Assembly (NCBI RefSeq): GCF_006345805.1 | Contig: NC_043013.1 | Location: 9,114,001 to 9,178,000 of the forward strand | Origin: Octopus sinensis | Taxonomy: Eukaryota | Direction of reading: 5' to 3' | Length of the DNA stretch: 64,000 nt | Shown here: positions 15,884-48,743 of the stretch, in pieces | Layout of the letters: every line of letters begins with the position of its first letter | Position numbering within the stretch: position 1 is the first letter of the stretch | The notes under the pieces: model-generated | Told to the model about the DNA's origin: nothing | The model's input: only the letters and a program-made list of their open reading frames with translations | The model's database searches: none | Translations under genes and position numbers: made by a program

Positions 15884-17463
15884 AGAAACTCTATAAGATG
15901 TACCCAGTGTAAGCTATGGACACATAAGAGGTGCAGCAATGTCAAAGGTAGGCTAACTGGGAAGATAGTTTTTGTATGTGGCAGATGCTCGGGAGCATTA
16001 ACCTCCGAAAATCTGCAGAAAACAACTTCCGTCACTTTCCAGGGGGGAAAAACTAGAAGTAGTTGATAGCTTCCGTTATCTAGGTGACCAAGTCAGTAGT
16101 GGGGGTGGGTGCGCTGAAAGTGTAACTGCTAGAATAAGAATAGCCTGGGCAAAGTTTAGGGAGCTCTTACCTCTGCTGGTGACTAAAGGCCTCTCGCTCA
16201 GAGTAAAAGGCAGACTGTATGATGCGTGTGTACGAACAGCCATGCTACATGGCAGCGAAACATGGGCCGTGACTGCTGAGGACATGCGTAAGCTCGTGAG
16301 GAATGAAGCCAGTATGCTCCGATGGATGTGTAATGTCAGTGTACATACTCGACAGAGCGTTAGCACCTTGAGAGAAATGCTGTACCTAAGAAGCATCAGT
16401 TGTGGTGTGCAAGAGAGACGATTGCGCTGGTATGGTCATGTGGCGAGAATGGATGAAGATAGGTGTGTGAGAAAGTGCCAATCCCTAGCAGTTGAGGGAA
16501 CCCGTGGAAGAGGTAGACCCAGGAAAACCTGGGACGAGGTGGTGAAGCACGACCTTCGAACTTTAGGCCTCACTGAGGAAATGACCAGAGACCGAGACCT
16601 TTGGAAATATTCTGTACGTGAGAAGACCAGGCAGGACAAGTGAGCCCAGCCCACTTATGAATGCCTTTCCTCCCTTGGACACAAAGACCGGTTGAGGCAA
16701 GCGAAGTCGATATAGAACCTCATCCGACGACAGACACCCATACCAACCCCCCATGCTTGCGAAGACATGTTGGGGCAAGCGAAATCGAAATCGAAACCGA
16801 ATTGAACCAGCCAGGATCCCTGCCTGGTGGTATGTAAAAAGCACTATCCGACTCGTGGCCGTGGCACGTAAAATACTCCAATGCGACCGTACGACAGGCA
16901 CCCATGCCAACCCCTTTGCTTGTGAGACATGTTGGGGCAAGCGAAATCGAAATCGAATTGAACCAGCCAGGATCCCTGGTCTGGTGGTACGTAAAAAGCA
17001 CTATCCGACTCGTGGCCGTGGCACGTAAAATACTCCAATGCGACCGTACGACAGGCACCCTTGCCAACCCCTTTGCTTGTGAAGACATGTTGGGGCAAGC
17101 GAAATCGAAATCGAATTGAACCAGCCAGGATCCCTGGTCTGGTGGTACGTAAAAAGCACTATCCGACTCGTGGCCGATGCCAGCACCGCCTCGACTGGCT
17201 TCCGTGCCGGTGGCACATAAAATACACCAATCTGACCGTGGCCGTTGCCAGCCCCGCCTGGCACCTGTGCGGGTGGCACGTAAAAAGCAACACCCCTACC
17301 TCACGGAGTGGTTGGCGTTAGGAAGGGCATCCAGCTGTAGAAACATTGCCAAATTAGACTGGAGGCCTGGTGCAGCCTCTGGCTTCCCAGAACCCCGTCA
17401 AACCGTCCAACCCATGCTAGCATGGAGAACGGACGTTAAACGACGATGATGATGATGATGATG
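15884..17463 (+). mobile_element. 5'-truncated RTE-clade LINE (RT C-terminus, 3' UTR, (GAT)n tail)
   Basis: DSFRYLG...VKGRLYDACVRTAMLHGSETW...LRWYGHVARM...GRGRPRKTW. Open apart from one extra G in the G6 run at 16042-16047; stop at 16643. Confidence 0.93.
16764..17170 (+). repeat. ~160-bp tandem repeat (about 2.5 units) in the RTE 3' UTR
   Basis: Units begin GACATGTTGGGGCAAGCGAAATCG at 16764, 16926 and 17084. Confidence 0.9.
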
Positions 17464-38994: not shown

Positions 38995-39108
38995 CAGGAT
39001 GTCATAGTTGAAATTTGAAAAACCTTTGATCACCGGTCTGTTTTGCTGAATCACATGGCTCAAGTAACCAAGGGTTCAACAACAACAAATTAGAAAAGGT
39101 AAGCTTAC

Positions 39109-39291
39109 TTCAGAGCAGATAATCGATTGAAATAATGCGATGCTGCTGGAAGATGAGACTAATTGACAGAACTGTTGTACGATGTCGGTATTAAATACAA
39201 GTTTGGCCGATGTCGATGCTAATGCCGCGAAGAGACCAGAAAAAACTGCCAAAAATGCTCCATAATTGATCACCTCCTTCCAGTTCTTCAT
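39109..39291 (-). CDS. TMEM42: TMEM42 homolog, exon 1 (61 codons, MKNWKEVINYG...SIICSE)
   Basis: GAFLAVFSGLFAALASTSAKLVF matches the TMEM42 N-terminal helix (GAFGALAAASAKLAF). In-frame ATG at 39291; phase-0 GTAAGC donor after 39109. The ORF-track start at 39315 is a TTG. Confidence 0.9.
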
Positions 39292-39780
39292 TTTAATCTG
39301 TTGACATGTTTCCAATAAATCCTGATTTTTTTTTTTTTTTTTGTATTAAGATGAAAATACTTTGTTAGCTATATTACATAAAAATAACAACATGTAAAAT
39401 ATTAATAATAAAGAAGTAAAATAAAGTATTGATAATAAGGAAACAAAATAAAATAAAATAATATCTGAAATTTGTTTTTTGTAATAGTTTATTAGTAGAA
39501 TCGAAACTGCGGCTTAGAATGATTCGTTCGCGTTTTTTCTTTCTCTCTTTGCAGTGAAGGGAAACTCACAAGCTGATTAGATAATTTTCTCAAATAATAA
39601 ATATCTTCAAAATATTCAATCATTAGCCATAGATATATTAACAAAATAAAATAATATAAAATGACGTGTTTTTAAATGTCAGGTAACGAACAAAATAAAA
39701 TTGTTATAGCGAATCCTTCTTCTCATTATATATACGGTCTTCACCCATGCTTTGCAGATTCGCAGTGAAAGTAATCCACT
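39292..39780. promoter_or_regulatory. Candidate bidirectional promoter / 5' UTR region between TMEM42 and EMC8/9
   Basis: Divergent start codons about 490 bp apart with no recognisable repeat between them. TSS positions are not visible. Confidence 0.6.
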
Positions 39781-39987
39781 ATGGTGGACTATAATGTCAG
39801 TCTTCAGGCTTACTGTAAAATATTATCTCATGCAGCCAAGTATCCTCATAGTTCCGTCAACGGAGTTCTTCTCGCCGAGGATACTAAGGTGAAGGATTCC
39901 AATAAATGCCTGAAAATGGTGGACACTATCCCTTTGTTTCATGTCTGCTTAGGACTCACGCCGATGCTCGAATTCGCCCTGACGCTG
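39781..39987 (+). CDS. EMC8: ER membrane protein complex subunit 8/9, exon 1 (69 codons)
   Basis: AYCKILSHAAKYPHSSVNGVLL...VDTIPLFH...LTPMLEFALTL is the EMC8/9 (UPF0172) N-terminus. Phase-0 GT donor at 39988. Confidence 0.95.
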
Positions 39988-42062
39988 GTTCGTATCCACA
40001 TAACATCATATTTCCCTACCTTTTTCAATTATTCTTACTGTTTATTCTCTTTTGTCAGTATTCATCTTTCCCCCACTTAATCCCCTGGTTGTGAAATCTA
40101 AGGGATTAACTGACAGACTTAGATTACTGATTTTAATTTGGTTTCGAAACCGTAAAGCGACAAACTCGTGCTTGAAAGTTCCGAGGATTTAATTGGAAAA
40201 AAACCTTATTTCCCCCCAAAAAAGATAAAAAGGAATTTTATTTCTAACAGTTGCTTATTTAAGAAAAACGCATTTAAGTAATTTATGTAGAAAGCTCTAT
40301 GATACATTAAAGTTTTGTAGCTGAAACTTGATGTCTTCTAAGAAAGTATTGTATTATTAGAAAATGGTTATCTATATATGGTGTTCAATGAATGAGTCTG
40401 CTATTTGCATGTCATGCCTTCTTTTTTTCCCCCTCCTCCACATAGGTATACAATTCTTACAGATACAGACTAGTCAAAGCGCAAGTGCAAATATCCTATT
40501 CGTTTTCTATTTCATTATTTGCTGGAAAAATATAAATTTCAACTTATGTTGGAGATTTTAATTTTGATTTGTTCTATATTTGGATTTAACACCATTTCAT
40601 TTCTATTCTATGAAAACGTTTCTTCAGTTGCTGTTGTTTAGCCCCCAAACCAGCCCTGATCGAGCAAACTTATTAAGGGAGTTCCAGTTGTGAGCATACC
40701 GTCTGGACTATGTCCTTCCCAAATTAAGGTGGTAGGGCGTGCTTTGATGGTGAACGGGTTATTATTTCATGCAGGCTGATCGGCCAGCCATTCGCTCGTT
40801 GGCTCGAGTGAAAACTCTTTAATTGTTGTTTAGAAATGATTGGGACTAAAAATTTATCAACGCCGCTCCCTTTTGTCTGTATGATTTTTGAGTAATTACT
40901 AAACGGATTAAGTTACACTTTAACGGTGCTAAGGTACTTAATTATTGAGGTAGGTTTCAATGTATTTCACATTGCAGGGGATAATAAGCAGATTAAATTA
41001 ACTACAGAGCCAAGAGCAATAAGTAGATTGCATCCTGTAGATTATCAATGCAGCAGGCAGATTATTCGGAATGTTAAGGGTACCTGTACAACAGATTGCA
41101 GGAAACTGATGATCAAATATATTCTGTGGTTGGCAGTAATAACCAGTTGATTAATTAGGATCAAGTTAAACCGTCATTAACTCAGCAGTTTGAACCCTGT
41201 TTTAAGATATTACTGAGTTGTGCTCCCACAATTCTCAGGATTTAGCATATTAAAAAAAAACACATTACATTTAATTAACTCTTTCATAACTGAGATACAT
41301 TACCTGTGTCTCCATTAATTTTGAAAATAATCAACTTGGCCATTTTTAAGTTGATAGTTGGAACATATGTAAAAAAAATGAATGCTTTCAAAACATGTTT
41401 TTATTGTTTTGTTTTATGGTGTCAGAATTTAGTATAAAAAGAGATAACCATGGATTGAACATCTTTGATCAGTGGTTTGCCAAATCTCAACTCGGGCCTG
41501 ACCTGGGCTAAACAGCACTACCAACAAAGGAATAAGTCTGCTGTTAGAAGTGCAATACTAGGGAACCGAAACTCAAGCTGTTTCACACCCGAGATTAGAA
41601 ACAGTTTTGAGTTGAATGAGCCGAGTACAGTTTGATTTGGTATGGAATGCTAAAACTGTAAGAAAGACTAAGCCCAGTTGAACTATTATCAATGAGTATT
41701 GAAAACGTTTGCAGATGTTTTGCAAACTGGAGGTTGCACTGAGTTGAACAGGTGATGCAGATGGCATGAAATAAGTCAGCAGTTTGAAATTGCCATAAGA
41801 GAAGCAGCTAAGAACTTTACTGTAGAACTGGCCCGAGACCGATAAGACCTGTGGAAGGCTGCTGTATTTCAAATCTGTCCAAACCACACCAGCATGGGAA
41901 AGCTGATAATAATAATAATAATAATAATAATGACAGTCATGACACCATCATCACTATCAACACTATTCACTAATTATTTTTGTTATTCCCTTATTAAAGA
42001 TACTTACTGTGGCTACTTTTATTTATTCTGCTGAACCTGCTGTTTTTGTTGTTGTTTTTCAG

Positions 42063-42139
42063 ATAGATATATATTGTAAAAGTAAAGGTTTGGTCATTGG
42101 TGGATATTACCAAGCCAATGAAAACTATTGCAATTCAAA
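42063..42139 (+). CDS. EMC8: EMC8/9 exon 2 (77 nt; IDIYCKSKGLVIGGYYQANENYCNS)
   Basis: TTTTTCAG acceptor, GYYQANE motif, GTAAGT donor; phase 0/2. Not in the ORF track; read manually. Confidence 0.95.
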
Positions 42140-42164
42140 GTAAGTTGTTATGAATTTTATTACA

Positions 42165-42565
42165 TTTTTAAAAAATTGTTTTGGTCATTTGACTGCAGCC
42201 ATGTTGCAGCACCACTTTTTCAGTCAAGTAAGTCGACCCCAGGACTTATTCTTTGTAAGCCGAGTACTTATTCCATCGGTCTCTTTTGTTGGCCCACTTA
42301 GTTACGGGGACATAAACACACAAGCATCGGTTGTCAAGCAATGTGAGGGGACACACAGACACACAAACATATGTATATGTATATATATACACACACACAC
42401 ATGGCGGGCTTCTTTCGGTTTCCATCTACCAAATCCACTCACAAGGCTTTGGTCAGCCTGAGGCTATAGAAGAAGACACTTGCCCTAGGTGCCCCTCAGT
42501 GGGACTGAACCCAGAACCATGTGGTTGGTAAACAAGCTACTTACCACACAGCCACTCCTGTGCCT
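42165..42565 (-). mobile_element. SINE family A fused downstream of the U6 copy
   Basis: Full-length family A homology; head lies 5-7 nt after the U6 terminal TTTT. Confidence 0.9.
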
Positions 42566-42572
42566 ATGTAGG

Positions 42573-42672
42573 AAAATATGGAATGTTTCACGAATTTGCA
42601 TGTCAACCTTGTGTAGGGGCCATGCTAATCTTCTCTATATCGTTTCAATTTTAGAATATGTACTGCCGTAGC
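42573..42672 (-). pseudogene. U6: U6 snRNA retro-pseudogene
   Basis: Reverse complement reads GCTACGGCAGTACATATTCTAAAATTGAAACGATATAGAGAAGATTAGCATGGCCCCTACACAAGGTTGACATGCAAATTCGTGAAACATTCCATATTTT. By eye about 11 differences per 100 nt from vertebrate U6; first 6 nt missing; ACAGAGA box mutated to ATAGAGA; no room for a snRNA promoter. Confidence 0.95.
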
Positions 42673-42696
42673 TAGTTGTTATGAATTTTATTATCA

Positions 42697-45470
42697 GTGC
42701 AGAATCATTAGTGTTGGACAAAGTGTCTTGCTGTATTTTTTCTGGTTCTTTATGTCTTGATTTCAAATCTAGCTGAGGTCAGCTTTGTGTTCCATCCCGC
42801 TGGTGTTAGTAAAATAAAGTACCAGTCAAGTATTGGGGTCAGTAGTGACCAACTAGCCATTTCCCCTCCAAACTGTTGCCCTTGTGCCTAACTCAGAAAA
42901 CATTATTATTTAGTCAGTGAACTGGCAGAATTGTTAGCATGCCAGACGAAATGCTTAATGGTATTTCCTCTGTCTTTACATTCTGAGTTCAAATTCTGCT
43001 GAGGTCGACCTTGCCTTTCATCCTTTCAGGGTTGGTAAAATATATACCAGTTGAGTACTGGGGTCGATGTAATCGACTAGCCATTCCTCAAAATTTCAGG
43101 CCCTGTGCCTATAGTAGAAAGAATTATTATTATTATATCAGGGTGGCCAAACTCACCCAGAAATGGGCCGAGAGGAAGCTGTCTCTGAAAGGTTGAGTGG
43201 AGGCGGCGAATGCGTACATCGTATCCGTCATCTATTACCGCTTGACCATCGTCCCTTGTCCCAACCGCTGGTTGGCCAAGCTGGTATGTCTGCTCTTCGA
43301 CTTTTTGTGGAAGGGTCAGGTACCACTGGTCAGGCGATCCATCTGCTGTCAACGACCGCTAAACGGAGGCCTTGGCATGCCGTGGTTACTGATGCGCAGA
43401 CATGCGCTCAGGCTATAACGTCTCAAGCGTTTCCTAGACGGTGAACAGGTGTAGTCATCTTTTGTCAGACGCGACTTTCCGCAGCTCGTCTCTTTGACAG
43501 AGCTGCAGACCTGGATCAAACGTAGACCGAGAAAGGGCGCTTGGCACCTCGAGTGCCGTCAAGCTCTCTCTGGCCTCTGCCAGGCGGGCAATGCGATCAG
43601 TTTTAGTTCCACTCTAGCATTCTATAGAGGGTTAGTGGAGGAAAAATGCGATGATGTTCTTGGGGAAACTAGGCGTTGATGATAACGAACTGAGCGGTCT
43701 GTTCGTAAGGACTTTCGGGCCGGGGCCAATGGATAATTTCCAAAGGTCCCTCGCCTGGCAGTGCTACCGAGGGGCTCTGCCTGTTCGGGATAAACTCTAC
43801 CGGCACGGAAGTGCCATCAGCCGGGCCTGCCCGAGGTGTTGCCAGGACACCGAAACTGTTCTGCACGCACTCGTCCAGTGCCCAAGTATTGCTGAACTAT
43901 GGGTTTATGTCGAACCGCTACTGTCACGTATAGGACGAATCCGGCTGTCAGCTGAATCCATAGTGAAGATTGCCCCCCCTACCTCCTTCAACAAGGAGGG
44001 CAAAGCCATTTTCCTGTGCCTAGTGGTTGTATGGTGGGCCTGTTTGAAAGGGCTAAAGTTAGACACTTTCCTCTTTGGTCAAGGCCTCATCAACTTTTTC
44101 AAGTTTCTCTTGAAAAGGAAGATGAGGTTAGAGAGGAGAGTGCTGTCTGATAGCAAGTTTTCTGAAAGATGGGTGAATTGTGCAAGAATGGCCAGTATAA
44201 ACGGACCAATTCTCAGGTTTCGCCTGTAATTGAAAAGGGTATTATAAAAGGAGAAAGGGGCTCTCTACCCCCCTTTTTGACCAGGCTCCCGTGGCTTTTA
44301 TGGGTTTTTCCATGTGAGACCTTTTCTTTTTTCGAAGTGTCTCCTCTATTGGGAGTTTTTCATTGTTATACTGCTTTTTACTAGATGTTTTCACAAACAG
44401 ACAAAACCTTTTGTAACCTTTCGTCCTGTTTTGTCCCTTTATGTTTTCTAATCATATTTGTCAGCCCTTTGAGGCCAATAAAAAAGAATTAATTATTATT
44501 ATTGTCGAGGTGGTGAGCTGGCAGAATCATTAGCATGCTGGGCAAAATACTTGGCAGCATTTCATTCGTCTTTACATTCTGTGTTCAAATTCTGTTGATG
44601 TCAACTTTGCCTTTTCATCCTTTCTGGATTGATAAATTAAGTAGCAGTGAAAAACTGGGGTCAACGTAATTGACTTTTCCTCTCCTCCCAAATTGCTGGA
44701 CCTTGTGCCAAAATTTGAAATCAGTATTATTATTATTGTCAAAAATGTGGCGAGCTGGCAGAACCGTTGACATGCTTGACAAAATGCTGATAAACATTTT
44801 GTCTGTCTTTACATTCTGGGTTCAAACTCCACTGAAGTCAACTATGCCTTTCATCTTTTCAGGGTCAGTAAGTAAGTACCAGTCAAACACTGGGGTTGAT
44901 GTAATCAACTTGCCCCCTCCCCTCAAAAACTGGTTGCCATATGCCAAAATTTGAAGCCATTATTATTATTATCATTATTATTATTACCAAGCTGGCAGAA
45001 TTGTTAGTGTGTTGGACAAAATACTTAGCTTTACTTCCAGCTCCTTCTGTTCTGAGTTCCTGTCCTGCTGAAGTTGACTTCATCTTTCATTCCCTTGGGA
45101 GCAATAAAGTACCAGTCAAGTATAGGGGTTCAATGTATTAGAATCTTCCTAAAATTGCTGGCCATGTGCTAAAACTTGAAATCATAATAATTCTTATGGC
45201 AGGAAGCTGACTGAATTGGTAAGCATGAGGGGCAAAATGCTTTGCAGTATTTCGTCCATCTTTACGTTCTGAGTTAAAATTTTTCAGGGCCGATAAATTA
45301 AATACCAGTAAAACACTGGGGTTAGTGTAATCAACTAGTTCCCACCCACAAAATTTCAGGCCTTGTGTCTTTAGTAGAAAGGATTATTATTATTATCATT
45401 GGCTGGTAGAATTGTTGGCATGTCAAACAAAGTACTTTGCAGCATTTCTTCTCTTTTCACTTTTTACATT
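42697..45470 (+). mobile_element. Head-to-tail array of about 7 SINE B copies separated by (ATT)n and split by a Tx1 insertion
   Basis: Units at about 42697, 42915, 44505, 44745, 44990, 45198 and 45402 (partial). Confidence 0.8.
43137..44482 (+). mobile_element. 5'-truncated Tx1/L1-clade LINE
   Basis: KLSLKGR...FDFLWKG...GGLGMP, plus a CCHC zinc finger AWQCYRGALPV...CPRCCQDTETVLHALVQCP; ends in AATAAA; candidate TSD AAAGAATT(A)ATTATTATTAT. Confidence 0.9.
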
Positions 45471-46154
45471 CTTACAGAATGTGCTGCATACATCATCATC
45501 ATCATCATCGTTTAACATCCGTTTTCTGTGCTAGCATGGGTTGGATGGTTCGACCAGGGTCTGGGAAGCCAGGAGGCTGCACCAGGCTCCAGTCTGATCT
45601 GGCAGTGTTTCTACAGCTGGATGCCCTGCCTTACGTCAACCACTCTGTTAGTGTAGTGGGTGCTTTTTACGTGCTACCGGCACAGGTGCCAGGGGAGGTT
45701 GGAAGCAGCCACGATCGGTTGCTGCTCTTTACGTGCCACCAACACAGAAGCCAGTCATCAGCCACATTCGGTGCTTTTTTACGTACCACCGGTACAGGTA
45801 TCACAACTACAATTTCCATTTGATATTTATTTTGATGTTGATGTACTTGACTCAATAGGTCTCCTCAAGCACAGCAGGTCCTGTGCTACCGGCACAGAAG
45901 CCAGTCAAGGTGGCGCTGGCATCGGCCACGTTCGGATGGTGCTTTTTATGTGCCGCTGGCACCTATGTATTTTTTTGTGGTAAGACTGAATTAGCAGAAG
46001 ACGTCTACAATTTGTGTAGATTTTTCTAACCATTTTCTTGGCTTTTAGAAATTTAAATCATTCTATGTGCAATTTTTTTTTTTACTCCATTATTTTGATT
46101 TGTACTTGGAAAAGTTATAAATAATGGTTAAGAATAAAAAAAAATTGTCTAAGC

Positions 46155-46820
46155 AGGTGCAGGAGTGGCTGTGTGGTAAGAAGTTTGCTTCCCAACCACA
46201 TGGTTCTGGGTTCAGTCCCATTGCATGGCACCTTGGGCAAGTGTCTACTACTATGGCCTCGGGCTGACCAAAGCGTTGTGAGTGGATTTGGTAGACGGAA
46301 ACTGAAAGAAGCCCGTTGTATGTATCATCATCATCATCGTTTAACGTCCGTTCTCCATGCTAGCATGGGTTGGACGGTTCGACCAGGGTTCTGGGAAGCC
46401 AGAAGGCTGCACCAGGCCCAGTCTGATCTGGCAATGTTTCTACGGTTGGATGCCCTTCCTAATGCCAACCACTCCGTGAGTGTAGTGGGTGCTTTTTATG
46501 TGCCACCGGCACCACAGTCGAATGGTGCTTTTTATGTGCCACCAGCACAGGGGCCAGGCGAGGCTGGCAACAGCCACGATCGGATGGTGCTTTTTACGTG
46601 CCACCGGCACAATGATGATATATATATAAGTCCATGTGTGTTTGTCTCCCATCACAGCTTGACACCAGTGTTGATTTGTTTATATCTATAACTTAGTGGT
46701 TCAGCAAAAGATACCAACAGTATAAATACTAGACCTGAAACATAAGTACTGGGCTAGATTTGACTAAACCTTTGGAGGGAGTGCCCCTGCATTGCCACGG
46801 TCCTATGACTGAAATAAGTG
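46155..46820 (+). mobile_element. SINE family A interrupted by an antisense RTE 3' fragment (46325-46610)
   Basis: Head and body at 46155-46322, a (CAT)n-tailed RTE fragment at the microsatellite position, then the SINE 3' half resumes at about 46620. Confidence 0.8.
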
Positions 46821-48743
46821 AAAATATAAAATACTTTCAATGATTGAATTAAATGAATAGTAATTATTTTAGAATTGTCAAAACTGTCATTACAGGTAAC
46901 TATGGATACATTTGTCTTTACTACAAGAAAAAATATCTGGTCTAAAACCAGGTTTTTTTTTCTTTTACATCTATTGTTGTGGACAAGGTGTTTGATTAGA
47001 TCACATTTCTTGCTGTAGATTGGACATCCACGTGGGCATCAGATCAAACTATACATTTGTTTTCAGCTCCTTTGCAAAACATAATGTTGCTAGCCTTCAT
47101 TTACTCACCCTGTGCTGGTGGCATGTGTAAAAAGATTCGAGTGAGGTCGTTGCCAGTACCTCCTGACTGGCCCCCGTGCCGGTGGCGCGTAAAAAGCACC
47201 CACTACACTCTCGGAGTGGTTGGCATTAGGAAGGGCATCCAGCTGTAGAAATTCTACCAAATCAAGATTGGAGCCTGGTGCAGCCATCTGGTTCGCCAGC
47301 CCTCAGTCAAAATCGTCCAACCCTTGCTAGCATGGAAAGCGGACGTTAAACAATGATGATGATGATGATAAGTGATAGGCAATAGGAAATATTTTCAACT
47401 ATGAAAATAATTCTTGCAACAACACCACCACCACCATCATCATCATCATTTAACATCTGTTTTCCATGCTGGCATGGGTTGGACAGATTGACAGGAGCTG
47501 CCTGAGCTCCATATCTGTTTTGGCATGGTTTCTACAGCTGGATGCCCTAATACCAGCCACTTTACAAAGTGTAGTGGGTGCTTTTATGCAGCACTGGCAC
47601 AGGTATTTTTTCGTGGTACTAGTACAGGTGCTGTTTCCATGGCATCAGCACCCACAAGCCCTCAAGATTAGGAACACTCGGATGGAGAGGGATGCCGGGG
47701 GACATGCCTGTATGCAAAGACAACCACAATTTTACTCAACTTGACATGTCTTTTCAAGCACAGCGAACAGATGTCCACCAATTTATAAAAGTTAAACTGG
47801 AAACAAAATAGTGAATGTTATGACATGATAAATAAGAAGTCTAAAGTGTTATTGATGTTAGATATACCGTTAGATGAAAAAAATTGAAATTTGCGATCAC
47901 TCCTTATAACTGATTTCAGCTTTCCTCTATTCATGTGTCTTTGGTGACCTGATAAAAACAGGATTGGGTAGATATGAGGAGAGTTTCCGTTACATATACA
48001 ATGCAGTTGGTGTAAGAATTAGAATTGCTAAAATATAAGCCAATAATAGTGACTATCAGCTACTGATGAGTCACAGTAGCTAAGTATTGCAAAAAGGAAG
48101 TAGGTATACAAGATGTAGAATGGAATATCAGTTAGATCTCCAATTAACTTTTTTTTTTTTATATAATTAAATGTCATGACTGCTGATTGTTCTTTGATAA
48201 TGGTGACCTACTTAGGGATATTTGACCTAATTATCATAACTAGGTCAAACAGTTTGGCTTGGTTCCTATTTATGGCATTTTTCAAAGGCTTTATTGGATG
48301 CATGTTTTAATATGTGTTAGTAGGTCAGTGTAGTAAGAATAGAAATATAGGCAATTAAAACAAATAGCTGTCTGCTGGTAGAGAAATATCTGTGATTTGG
48401 TGGTTAAATAATGTGAACTTTATAGAGAAAAAGTGAATCCAGAAAATGTTGAAGTTCAGGAGACAAGAAAAGAAAGTCTTACAACTCGGTCTTTCAGATT
48501 TGAATTTGACCAAATATTTTTGTCTAGTTTGGCTTGGTTTCTATCGCTGGTTGCCTTACTTAATGCTAACCACTCCAAGAGTGTAGTGGGTGCCTTTTAC
48601 ATCACTGGCACTGGTTATAACGATTACACTTGGCTTGACGTGTCTTAAACACAGCAAGCTCAATCACTTGTCATCACCACCATGCATTATCTTGTAGCCT
48701 CAAGCTTTTGATATTGTGATTGTTTATTTTTACAATGACATTG

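What the first reader, a model, noticed from the sequence alone, without database searches (positions are those of the whole stretch)
42143..42693. U6 snRNA-SINE chimeric retrocopy with an exact 20-bp target-site duplication at the EMC8 exon-2 donor
Seen: on the minus strand a near-full-length U6 copy ending in TTTT is followed, after 5-7 nt, by a full-length family A SINE. The whole composite is bracketed by AGTTGTTATGAATTTTATTA at 42143-42162 and 42674-42693. The SINE has no TSD of its own, and the left repeat begins at intron position +4. Established: U6/L1 and U6/Alu chimeras arise in vertebrates by template switching or RNA ligation during LINE reverse transcription. Inference: a single U6-SINE chimeric retroposition in a cephalopod. 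I know of no such report, but could not check.
Basis: partly seen in the sequence, partly recalled or inferred. Interest (0 to 1): 0.82.

Follow-up and report, generated by a model that had tools for sequence, protein, structure and literature searches.

The report
U6–SINE chimeric retrocopy in octopus
A decayed copy of the U6 spliceosomal RNA joined head-to-tail to an octopus SINE sits inside one 20-bp target duplication in an EMC8 intron. It is most likely one retrotransposition event, of a kind already known from vertebrates and apparently not yet reported from a cephalopod.

Summary
On the minus strand the order is: 20-bp repeat (42693-42674), a 101-nt U6 pseudogene ending in TTTT (42673-42573; Rfam U6, 89 bits), a 7-nt linker CCTACAT, a full-length 390-nt SINE (42565-42176), a tail remnant, and the same 20-mer (42162-42143). 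That last copy starts at position +4 of the intron after EMC8 coding exon 2. Neither part has its own target-site duplication (TSD).

The window is Octopus sinensis. O. vulgaris carries the identical composite. O. bimaculoides has the same SINE 3' part against the same target sequence, so the insertion predates that split. A 5.1-kb deletion there removed the SINE head, the U6 and the other repeat, so no empty or U6-less site could be recovered.

U6 and SINE are about equally diverged from their sources (about 9% and 7.6% at non-CpG sites).

The best reading is a single LINE-mediated event in which reverse transcriptase copied a SINE RNA to its 5' end and then switched to U6 snRNA.

U6/SINE chimeras made by L1, L2 and RTE-type LINEs are already described in human, platypus and lizard. 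This is a new member of a known kind. No genome-wide census was possible.

The parts
42674..42693 (-). Upstream (5') copy of the 20-bp target-site duplication. It reads TAATAAAATTCATAACAACT in element orientation.
   Evidence: Exact duplicate of 42143-42162 and only two copies in the window. Also exact in O. vulgaris. Absent from O. bimaculoides.
42573..42673 (-). U6 snRNA retropseudogene of 101 nt. It lacks about the first 4-6 nt and ends in TTTT. ACAGAGA is mutated to ATAGAGA.
   Evidence: Rfam RF00026, 89.4 bits, E 1.5e-21. 8/88 non-CpG and 3/12 CpG-site differences from canonical U6. O. vulgaris ortholog scores 92.2 bits.
42566..42572 (-). 7-nt linker CCTACAT between the U6 T-tract and the SINE head. 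The last 1-2 nt could belong to the SINE 5' end.
   Evidence: Read from the sequence. Identical in O. vulgaris. Not part of the SINE consensus.
42176..42565 (-). Full-length SINE of 390 nt. It has a tRNA-like head with box A/B-like motifs, a CORE-like segment and an internal (TA/TG)n microsatellite.
   Evidence: About 11 other full-length copies in the window at 71-85% identity. 23/303 non-CpG differences from the local consensus. ARAGORN folds the consensus head as a tRNA only at a relaxed threshold.
42163..42175 (-). Degenerate SINE 3' tail (TTTTTTAAAAATG). The family tail is (GTAAAAGA)n, and the O. bimaculoides ortholog still reads GTAAAAAAAGG.
   Evidence: Family alignment. Three-species alignment.
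42143..42162 (-). Downstream (3') copy of the 20-bp target-site duplication. It occupies intron positions +4 to +23.
   Evidence: Present once in O. bimaculoides with a 3-bp AAC insertion.
42063..42139 (+). EMC8 coding exon 2. The donor GTAAGT at 42140-42145 is left intact by the insertion.
   Evidence: tblastn and translation. Identical to O. sinensis EMC8, P0001.

Best explanation
This is a single target-primed reverse transcription event by the LINE that mobilises this SINE family. The LINE endonuclease nicked the antisense strand of EMC8 intron 2 at ...TTTTATTA^TCAG. The freed T/A-rich 3' end primed on the (GUAAAAGA)n tail of a Pol III SINE transcript, and the RT copied the SINE to its very 5' end. 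It then added, or copied, 5-7 extra nucleotides and jumped to the 3' U-tract of a mature U6 snRNA, which it copied almost to the 5' end. Second-strand cleavage 20 bp away produced the 20-bp TSD around the bipartite cDNA. The event happened in an ancestor of O. sinensis, O. vulgaris and O. bimaculoides, and the copy has decayed neutrally since. Shown: the anatomy, the single TSD, the shared ancestry and the similar age of both halves. Inferred: the order of copying, the template switch and the identity of the enzyme.
For: One exact 20-bp TSD flanks U6+SINE, and neither part has its own. U6 is 5' and the SINE 3', in one orientation. U6 stops at TTTT, the length of the mature RNA 3' end, and the SINE starts at the family's consensus first base. 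The SINE tail abuts TSD2 directly in O. sinensis and in O. bimaculoides, so the SINE 3' end was the primed end. The target start TAATAAAA resembles the tail unit GTAAAAGA, so microhomology is available for priming. Non-CpG divergence is 9% for U6 and 7.6% for the SINE. Both exceed about half of the 6.5-7% pairwise non-CpG O. sinensis-O. bimaculoides divergence in the flanking unique sequence, which fits both halves predating that split. None of about 11 other full-length SINE copies has U6 upstream, and no other U6 fragment exists in about 128 kb of octopod (Octopus and Argonauta) sequence, so the adjacency is not a family feature. The same architecture and mechanism are documented for U6/L1, U6/L2, U6/RTE, U6/Mon-1, U6/AnolisSINE2 and U6/Alu (PMC4476161).
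Against: No empty site or intermediate state could be examined. O. bimaculoides deleted the U6-bearing half, and Argonauta is too divergent. This is one locus only, and no genome-wide tally was possible. The partner LINE was not identified in the window. A 7-nt linker is long for non-templated addition. An untouched pair of 20-mers is mildly unexpected at this age: P is about 0.03-0.1 by a simple Poisson estimate. That is eased by the repeat having no CpG and lying next to a splice donor.
Confidence: 0.6

Rival explanations
1. The chimera formed at the RNA level before reverse transcription. U6 snRNA carrying a 2',3'-cyclic phosphate was ligated (RtcB-type) to a 5'-OH RNA containing the SINE, and the fused RNA was retrotransposed through the SINE tail.
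For: It gives the same final architecture. The mechanism has been demonstrated for U6/L1 in human cells (PMC6789731). U6 ends at U4, as expected for the cyclic-phosphate form.
Against: A primary Pol III SINE transcript has a 5' triphosphate, not a 5'-OH. Ligation would therefore need cleavage of a longer SINE-containing RNA only 5-7 nt upstream of the exact SINE start, which is a coincidence that template switching does not need (inference).
Confidence: 0.12
2. Co-transcription from a source locus (5' transduction), or a copy of a pre-existing composite. A SINE lay a few bp downstream of a U6 gene or pseudogene. Pol III read through the weak T4 terminator, and the U6-spacer-SINE RNA was retrotransposed as one unit.
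For: It explains the 7-nt spacer as genomic sequence and the near-exact U6 5' end. A comparable U6-T7-A-SINE juxtaposition was seen in an unrelated marine eukaryote scaffold (L005).
Against: Only four T follow U6, which matches mature U6 rather than typical U6 gene terminators of 5 or more T (established knowledge). No second copy of the junction occurs in the available octopod sequence. About 11 other SINE copies lack U6.
Confidence: 0.13
3. Two sequential insertions. The SINE inserted first and made the 20-bp TSD. U6 cDNA was captured later exactly between the upstream repeat and the SINE head, without making a TSD, for example by endonuclease-independent repair.
For: It cannot be excluded without an ortholog that has the SINE plus both repeats but no U6.
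Against: It needs an insertion within about 7 bp of a SINE head, in the right order and orientation. From the window's SINE density the chance is about 1e-3 (inference). U6 shows no poly(A), no own TSD and no truncation signature. U6 divergence (7-8/88 non-CpG) is higher than expected for an insertion after the O. bimaculoides split and equals that of the SINE. The reverse order (U6 first) is excluded, because the SINE tail abuts the outer TSD directly.
Confidence: 0.1

Closest known systems
U6/SINE chimeric retrocopies of vertebrates: U6/Mon-1 in platypus, U6/AnolisSINE2 in lizard, rare U6/Alu in human (Doucet et al. 2015, PMC4476161; Buzdin et al. 2003)
   Same: U6 lies 5' of a SINE in the same orientation. 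One TSD surrounds both. The chimeras are attributed to template switching by the SINE's partner LINE, and are made by 'stringent' non-L1 LINEs whose tails are simple repeats.
   Different: The host is a cephalopod mollusc. The SINE is a different family, with a (GTAAAAGA)n tail. The U6 is nearly full length, whereas platypus copies are mostly 5'-truncated. The TSD is 20 bp, against 1-9 bp for platypus L2 chimeras. There is a 7-nt linker.
U6/L1 chimeric pseudogenes of mammals (Buzdin 2002; Garcia-Perez 2007; Moldovan 2019, PMC6789731)
   Same: Full-length U6 ending in its U-tract is fused to the 3' part of a retroelement and flanked by one TSD.
   Different: The 3' partner here is a complete SINE, not a 5'-truncated L1. 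There is no poly(A) tail. The enzyme is unlikely to be an L1-type relaxed RT.
Bipartite/tripartite chimeric retrogenes of Magnaporthe grisea (MINE LINE; PMC2104539)
   Same: They show that LINE template jumping onto small cellular RNAs also occurs outside vertebrates.
   Different: A fungal LINE and a different small RNA (WEIRD, not U6).
SINEU, SINEs with U1/U2 snRNA-derived heads (Kojima 2015, PMC4494074)
   Same: An snRNA sequence is fused upstream of a LINE-tailed module. Such fusions are thought to start as template-switch chimeras.
   Different: SINEU are multi-copy, self-propagating families. Here only one copy is seen, and U6's promoter is external, so the composite should not be autonomously transcribed.

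Membership tests
Bipartite snRNA/retroelement chimeric retrocopy (U6/LINE, U6/SINE type) | The 5' module is a (near) full-length small nuclear RNA copy ending at its natural 3' end. | tested here: met
   Rfam U6, 89.4 bits, model positions 1-105. The copy ends CCATATTTT and lacks only about 4-6 nt at the 5' end.
Bipartite snRNA/retroelement chimeric retrocopy (U6/LINE, U6/SINE type) | The 3' module is a LINE 3' part or a SINE, with its tail, in the same orientation. | tested here: met
   A full-length SINE on the same strand. Its tail remnant abuts TSD2, and the tail is clearer in O. bimaculoides.
Bipartite snRNA/retroelement chimeric retrocopy (U6/LINE, U6/SINE type) | A single TSD flanks the whole composite, with no TSD around either module. 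| tested here: met
   Exact 20-bp repeat at the outer boundaries only. The best internal repeats are 4-6 nt and not at the boundaries.
Bipartite snRNA/retroelement chimeric retrocopy (U6/LINE, U6/SINE type) | A pre-integration (empty) site with one copy of the target in an outgroup, and no intermediate with one module only. | tested here: inconclusive
   O. vulgaris carries the composite. O. bimaculoides keeps the SINE 3' part and TSD2 but has a 5.1-kb deletion over the SINE head, U6 and TSD1. The Argonauta intron is unalignable.
Bipartite snRNA/retroelement chimeric retrocopy (U6/LINE, U6/SINE type) | Recurrence: independent chimeras with different junctions in the same genome. | not testable with these tools
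   No octopus genome is in the searchable collections. There is no other U6 fragment in about 128 kb of octopod sequence held.
snRNA-headed SINE family (SINEU-like) | Many copies share the same snRNA-body junction. | tested here: not met
   About 11 other full-length copies of the SINE in the window have unrelated 5' flanks and no U6. This is limited to the window.
Functional U6 snRNA gene | Intact catalytic ACAGAGA box and overall sequence conservation; own upstream promoter outside any TSD. | tested here: not met
   ACAGAGA is mutated to ATAGAGA. There are 11 differences from canonical U6 (8 at non-CpG and 3 at CpG sites). The copy lies inside a TSD in an intron, and the 5' end is incomplete.
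tRNA-derived CORE-type SINE (possibly related to octopus OR1) | tRNA-like head with box A/B, a conserved core, a LINE-type tail, and multiple copies. | tested here: inconclusive
   Multi-copy status and the (GTAAAAGA)n tail are shown. ARAGORN and Rfam do not call a tRNA at default settings, and ARAGORN does so only at a relaxed threshold. The CORE similarity (CCTTGGGCAAGT...GCCTC) is recalled from memory.

The most novel reading that the evidence does not exclude
The LINE that drives this very abundant octopus SINE family switches templates onto spliceosomal snRNAs routinely. Octopod genomes would then hold a whole population of U6 (and other snRNA)-SINE/LINE chimeras, or even a propagating U6-headed composite family. 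That would give a direct view of how new SINE heads are recruited in an invertebrate with massive SINE expansion.
Probability: 0.12. Interest if true: 0.55.

Novelty: new member of a known kind. Interest (0 to 1): 0.3.

Why it matters
It extends a well-described by-product of LINE reverse transcription, template jumping onto U6 snRNA, to a cephalopod and to a non-poly(A), repeat-tailed SINE/LINE system. That supports the view that template switching is a general property of non-LTR retrotransposon RTs and a route to new composite SINEs. The insertion is also a clean shared-derived marker for the O. sinensis/O. vulgaris/O. bimaculoides lineage. It shows that a 511-bp insertion (531 bp with the duplicated target) 3 bp from a splice donor is tolerated when the TSD regenerates the donor consensus. 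It is a single, old, decayed locus with no sign of function, so its weight is modest.

Tried and rejected
- **Argonauta hians as an empty-site outgroup:** the exon aligns but the intron does not.
- **O. bimaculoides as outgroup:** it is informative only for the SINE 3' part, because a 5.1-kb deletion removes the rest. There is no N gap at the junction, so this is not an assembly gap.
- **Finding other U6-SINE junctions or other octopod loci through translated ORFs:** the junction ORF and the exon-2 ORF gave no candidates in the word-indexed protein search.
- **The exhaustive representative search:** it returned 455 U6-antisense ORFs. Those inspected were from mammals and other eukaryotes, and none had the octopus SINE head.
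- **Scanning JGI metagenome contigs for the junction pattern, then for the SINE head:** both gave 0 hits, so the collection holds no exact match to the SINE head and the negative result is uninformative.
- **Looking for the partner LINE in the window:** a zf-RVT LINE fragment (43651-44229) and another putative LINE 3' ORF (16179-16643) do not end in the SINE tail.
- **tRNA origin of the SINE head:** not detected at default thresholds.
- **Functional U6 gene:** rejected, as set out in the membership test.
- **Chance repeat:** rejected.
- **'U6 first, SINE second':** rejected, because the SINE tail abuts the outer TSD.

Full report
**What is there.** The window is Octopus sinensis chromosome CM016875.1. 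The locus fetched through the O. sinensis EMC8 protein is 100% identical to it. EMC8 lies on the + strand. Coding exon 1 starts at 39781. Coding exon 2 is 42063-42139 and encodes IDIYCKSKGLVIGGYYQANENYCNSK. The donor GTAAGT starts at 42140.

Read on the minus strand, the flagged interval contains these parts in order:

- the 20-mer TAATAAAATTCATAACAACT (42693-42674)
- a 101-nt U6 copy, from AGCTACGGCAGTAC to CCATATTTT (42673-42573)
- CCTACAT (42572-42566)
- a 390-nt SINE, from AGGCACAGGAGTGGCTGTGTGG to AAATGACCAAAACAA (42565-42176)
- TTTTTTAAAAATG (42175-42163)
- the same 20-mer again (42162-42143)

**Checks on each part.** The 20-mer occurs exactly twice in the window even when three mismatches are allowed, and no shuffle gave two matches. 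The U6 call is the only Rfam gathering-level hit in 64 kb: RF00026, 89.4 bits against a threshold of 44. The SINE belongs to a family with about 11 further near-full-length copies in the window, at 71-85% identity. These define its first base (AGGCGCAGG...) and its normal 3' end...GACTGAAACAAG(TAAAAGAG)n. None of them has U6 upstream. A search for direct repeats around U6 alone or around the SINE alone finds only 4-6-mers away from the boundaries. The 20-mer is the best repeat around the composite. The one nuance is that U6 lacks its first 4-6 nt, or overlaps the repeat by 2-3 nt.

**Comparative evidence.**

- **O. vulgaris (L002).** It is collinear with the window at about 97-98% identity. 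It carries the same composite with both 20-mers exact and only two substitutions, both in U6.
- **O. bimaculoides (L004).** At the same donor it has one copy of the target (with a 3-bp AAC insertion), directly followed by the SINE tail and the 3' 330 nt of the same SINE. This copy shares private substitutions such as GTGGGCC and GACC[A/G]AAAC. Its tail there reads GTAAAAAAAGG, closer to the family tail. The SINE insertion therefore predates the O. sinensis/O. bimaculoides split, and the SINE 3' end is what was joined to the target. That rules out the order 'U6 first, SINE later'.
- **The O. bimaculoides deletion.** The alignment jumps from window 42507 to 47621 with a few bases of microhomology and no N gap. 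The second 20-mer is absent. A 5.1-kb deletion has removed the SINE head, U6 and the upstream repeat.
- **Argonauta hians.** It aligns only in the exon.

No empty or intermediate allele could therefore be recovered.

**Age.** Against canonical U6, the copy differs at 8/88 non-CpG and 3/12 CpG-context sites. One or two of these may be native to octopus, for example the UACG loop. The SINE differs from the local consensus at 23/303 non-CpG and 13/36 CpG sites. The two halves are indistinguishable in age. Both are more diverged than about half of the 6.5-7% pairwise non-CpG divergence between O. sinensis and O. bimaculoides in the flanking unique sequence. This fits both halves predating that split. 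Survival of both 20-mers without a change is mildly unlikely (about 0.03-0.1). It is plausible for an AT-rich, CpG-free sequence of which one copy adjoins a splice donor.

**Mechanism.** The anatomy is that of the bipartite chimeric retrocopies described for U6/L1, and for U6 with L2, RTE, Mon-1, AnolisSINE2 and Alu (PMC4476161; PMC6789731). I favour template switching, for three reasons:

- The SINE is complete to its consensus first base, as expected if RT ran off the 5' end of a Pol III transcript.
- U6 stops at four T, the mature RNA end.
- The SINE tail, not U6, is joined to the target, and the target's start (TAATAAAA) offers microhomology to the tail unit.

The 7-nt linker would be non-templated addition or extra 5' bases of the donor transcript. 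RNA ligation before reverse transcription gives the same product. It needs a 5'-OH only 5-7 nt upstream of the SINE start, which makes it less likely. Read-through from a U6 locus with a SINE just downstream, or copying of an existing composite, cannot be excluded without the genome. Sequential insertion of U6 precisely at the repeat/SINE boundary without a TSD is improbable: about 1e-3 from SINE density, plus the age argument. The enzyme is unidentified. The two LINE fragments checked in the window do not share the SINE tail. RTE-class LINEs are reported as the active LINEs in octopus (PMC9115989).

**Function.** None is apparent. The U6 copy has a mutated ACAGAGA box and lies inside a TSD, antisense in an intron. 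The TSD regenerates the donor (GTA|AGT), so the EMC8 5' splice site is unchanged.

**Novelty.** Full-text searches found no paper linking U6 chimeric retrocopies with cephalopods. The phenomenon, including U6/SINE chimeras made by non-L1 LINEs, is established in vertebrates and, with another small RNA, in a fungus. I rate this a new member of a known kind, of modest interest.

Noticed in passing
window 42508-47620 versus L004 5723/5720: O. bimaculoides lacks 5.1 kb of EMC8 intron 2 that is present in O. sinensis and O. vulgaris. The breakpoint lies inside the SINE (…CAGTGGGA|GTGCAGG…), with short microhomology and no assembly gap. The whole gene is 8.7 kb in O. bimaculoides against 16.7 kb in O. 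sinensis.
   Followed up: partly
L005 1590-1940 (minus strand; TARA metagenome scaffold_73264, sample SAMEA6045696): In an unidentified marine eukaryote, a U6 pseudogene (Rfam 96 bits, ACAGAGA also mutated to ATAGAGA, loop CTACGG as in octopus) is followed after T7+A by a tRNA-derived SINE (GGAGCAATGGCCTAGTGGTTAAGG...). It may be a second U6-SINE chimera outside vertebrates. An 11-nt repeat (AAAGTTTTTCA) lies 47 nt upstream of U6 and right after the SINE, so the TSD is unclear.
   Followed up: partly
window 39906-40094 (+) and L002: The O. vulgaris protein model CAI9735620.1 (P0014, 163 aa) starts with MPENGGHYPFVSCLLRTHADARIRPDA. That is the out-of-frame ORF 39906.. inside EMC8 exon 1, so the deposited model appears to mis-frame exon 1. 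The O. sinensis and O. bimaculoides models are the normal 206 aa.
   Followed up: partly
window 43651-44229 (+): An ORF with a zinc-binding reverse-transcriptase C-terminal domain (Pfam zf-RVT, E 5.8e-9), which is a LINE 3' fragment about 1 kb from the composite. Its 3' end does not match the SINE tail.
   Followed up: partly
window 42357-42415 and the equivalent position in other SINE copies: The SINE family carries an internal (TA)n/(TG)n microsatellite of very variable length. Sub-threshold Rfam hits to mir-297 and mir-1277 there are caused by this simple repeat.
   Followed up: yes
window 39076-39315 (-), L001 1-2511: An EamA-domain membrane protein gene is transcribed divergently from EMC8. 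The two start codons are about 470 bp apart, which suggests a shared bidirectional promoter region.
   Followed up: no
window 42659-42664; L005 1924-1929: Both U6 pseudogenes read CUACGG (a UACG tetraloop) where vertebrate U6 has CUUCGG. This may be the native invertebrate U6 sequence rather than a mutation, which would slightly lower the divergence estimate.
   Followed up: no
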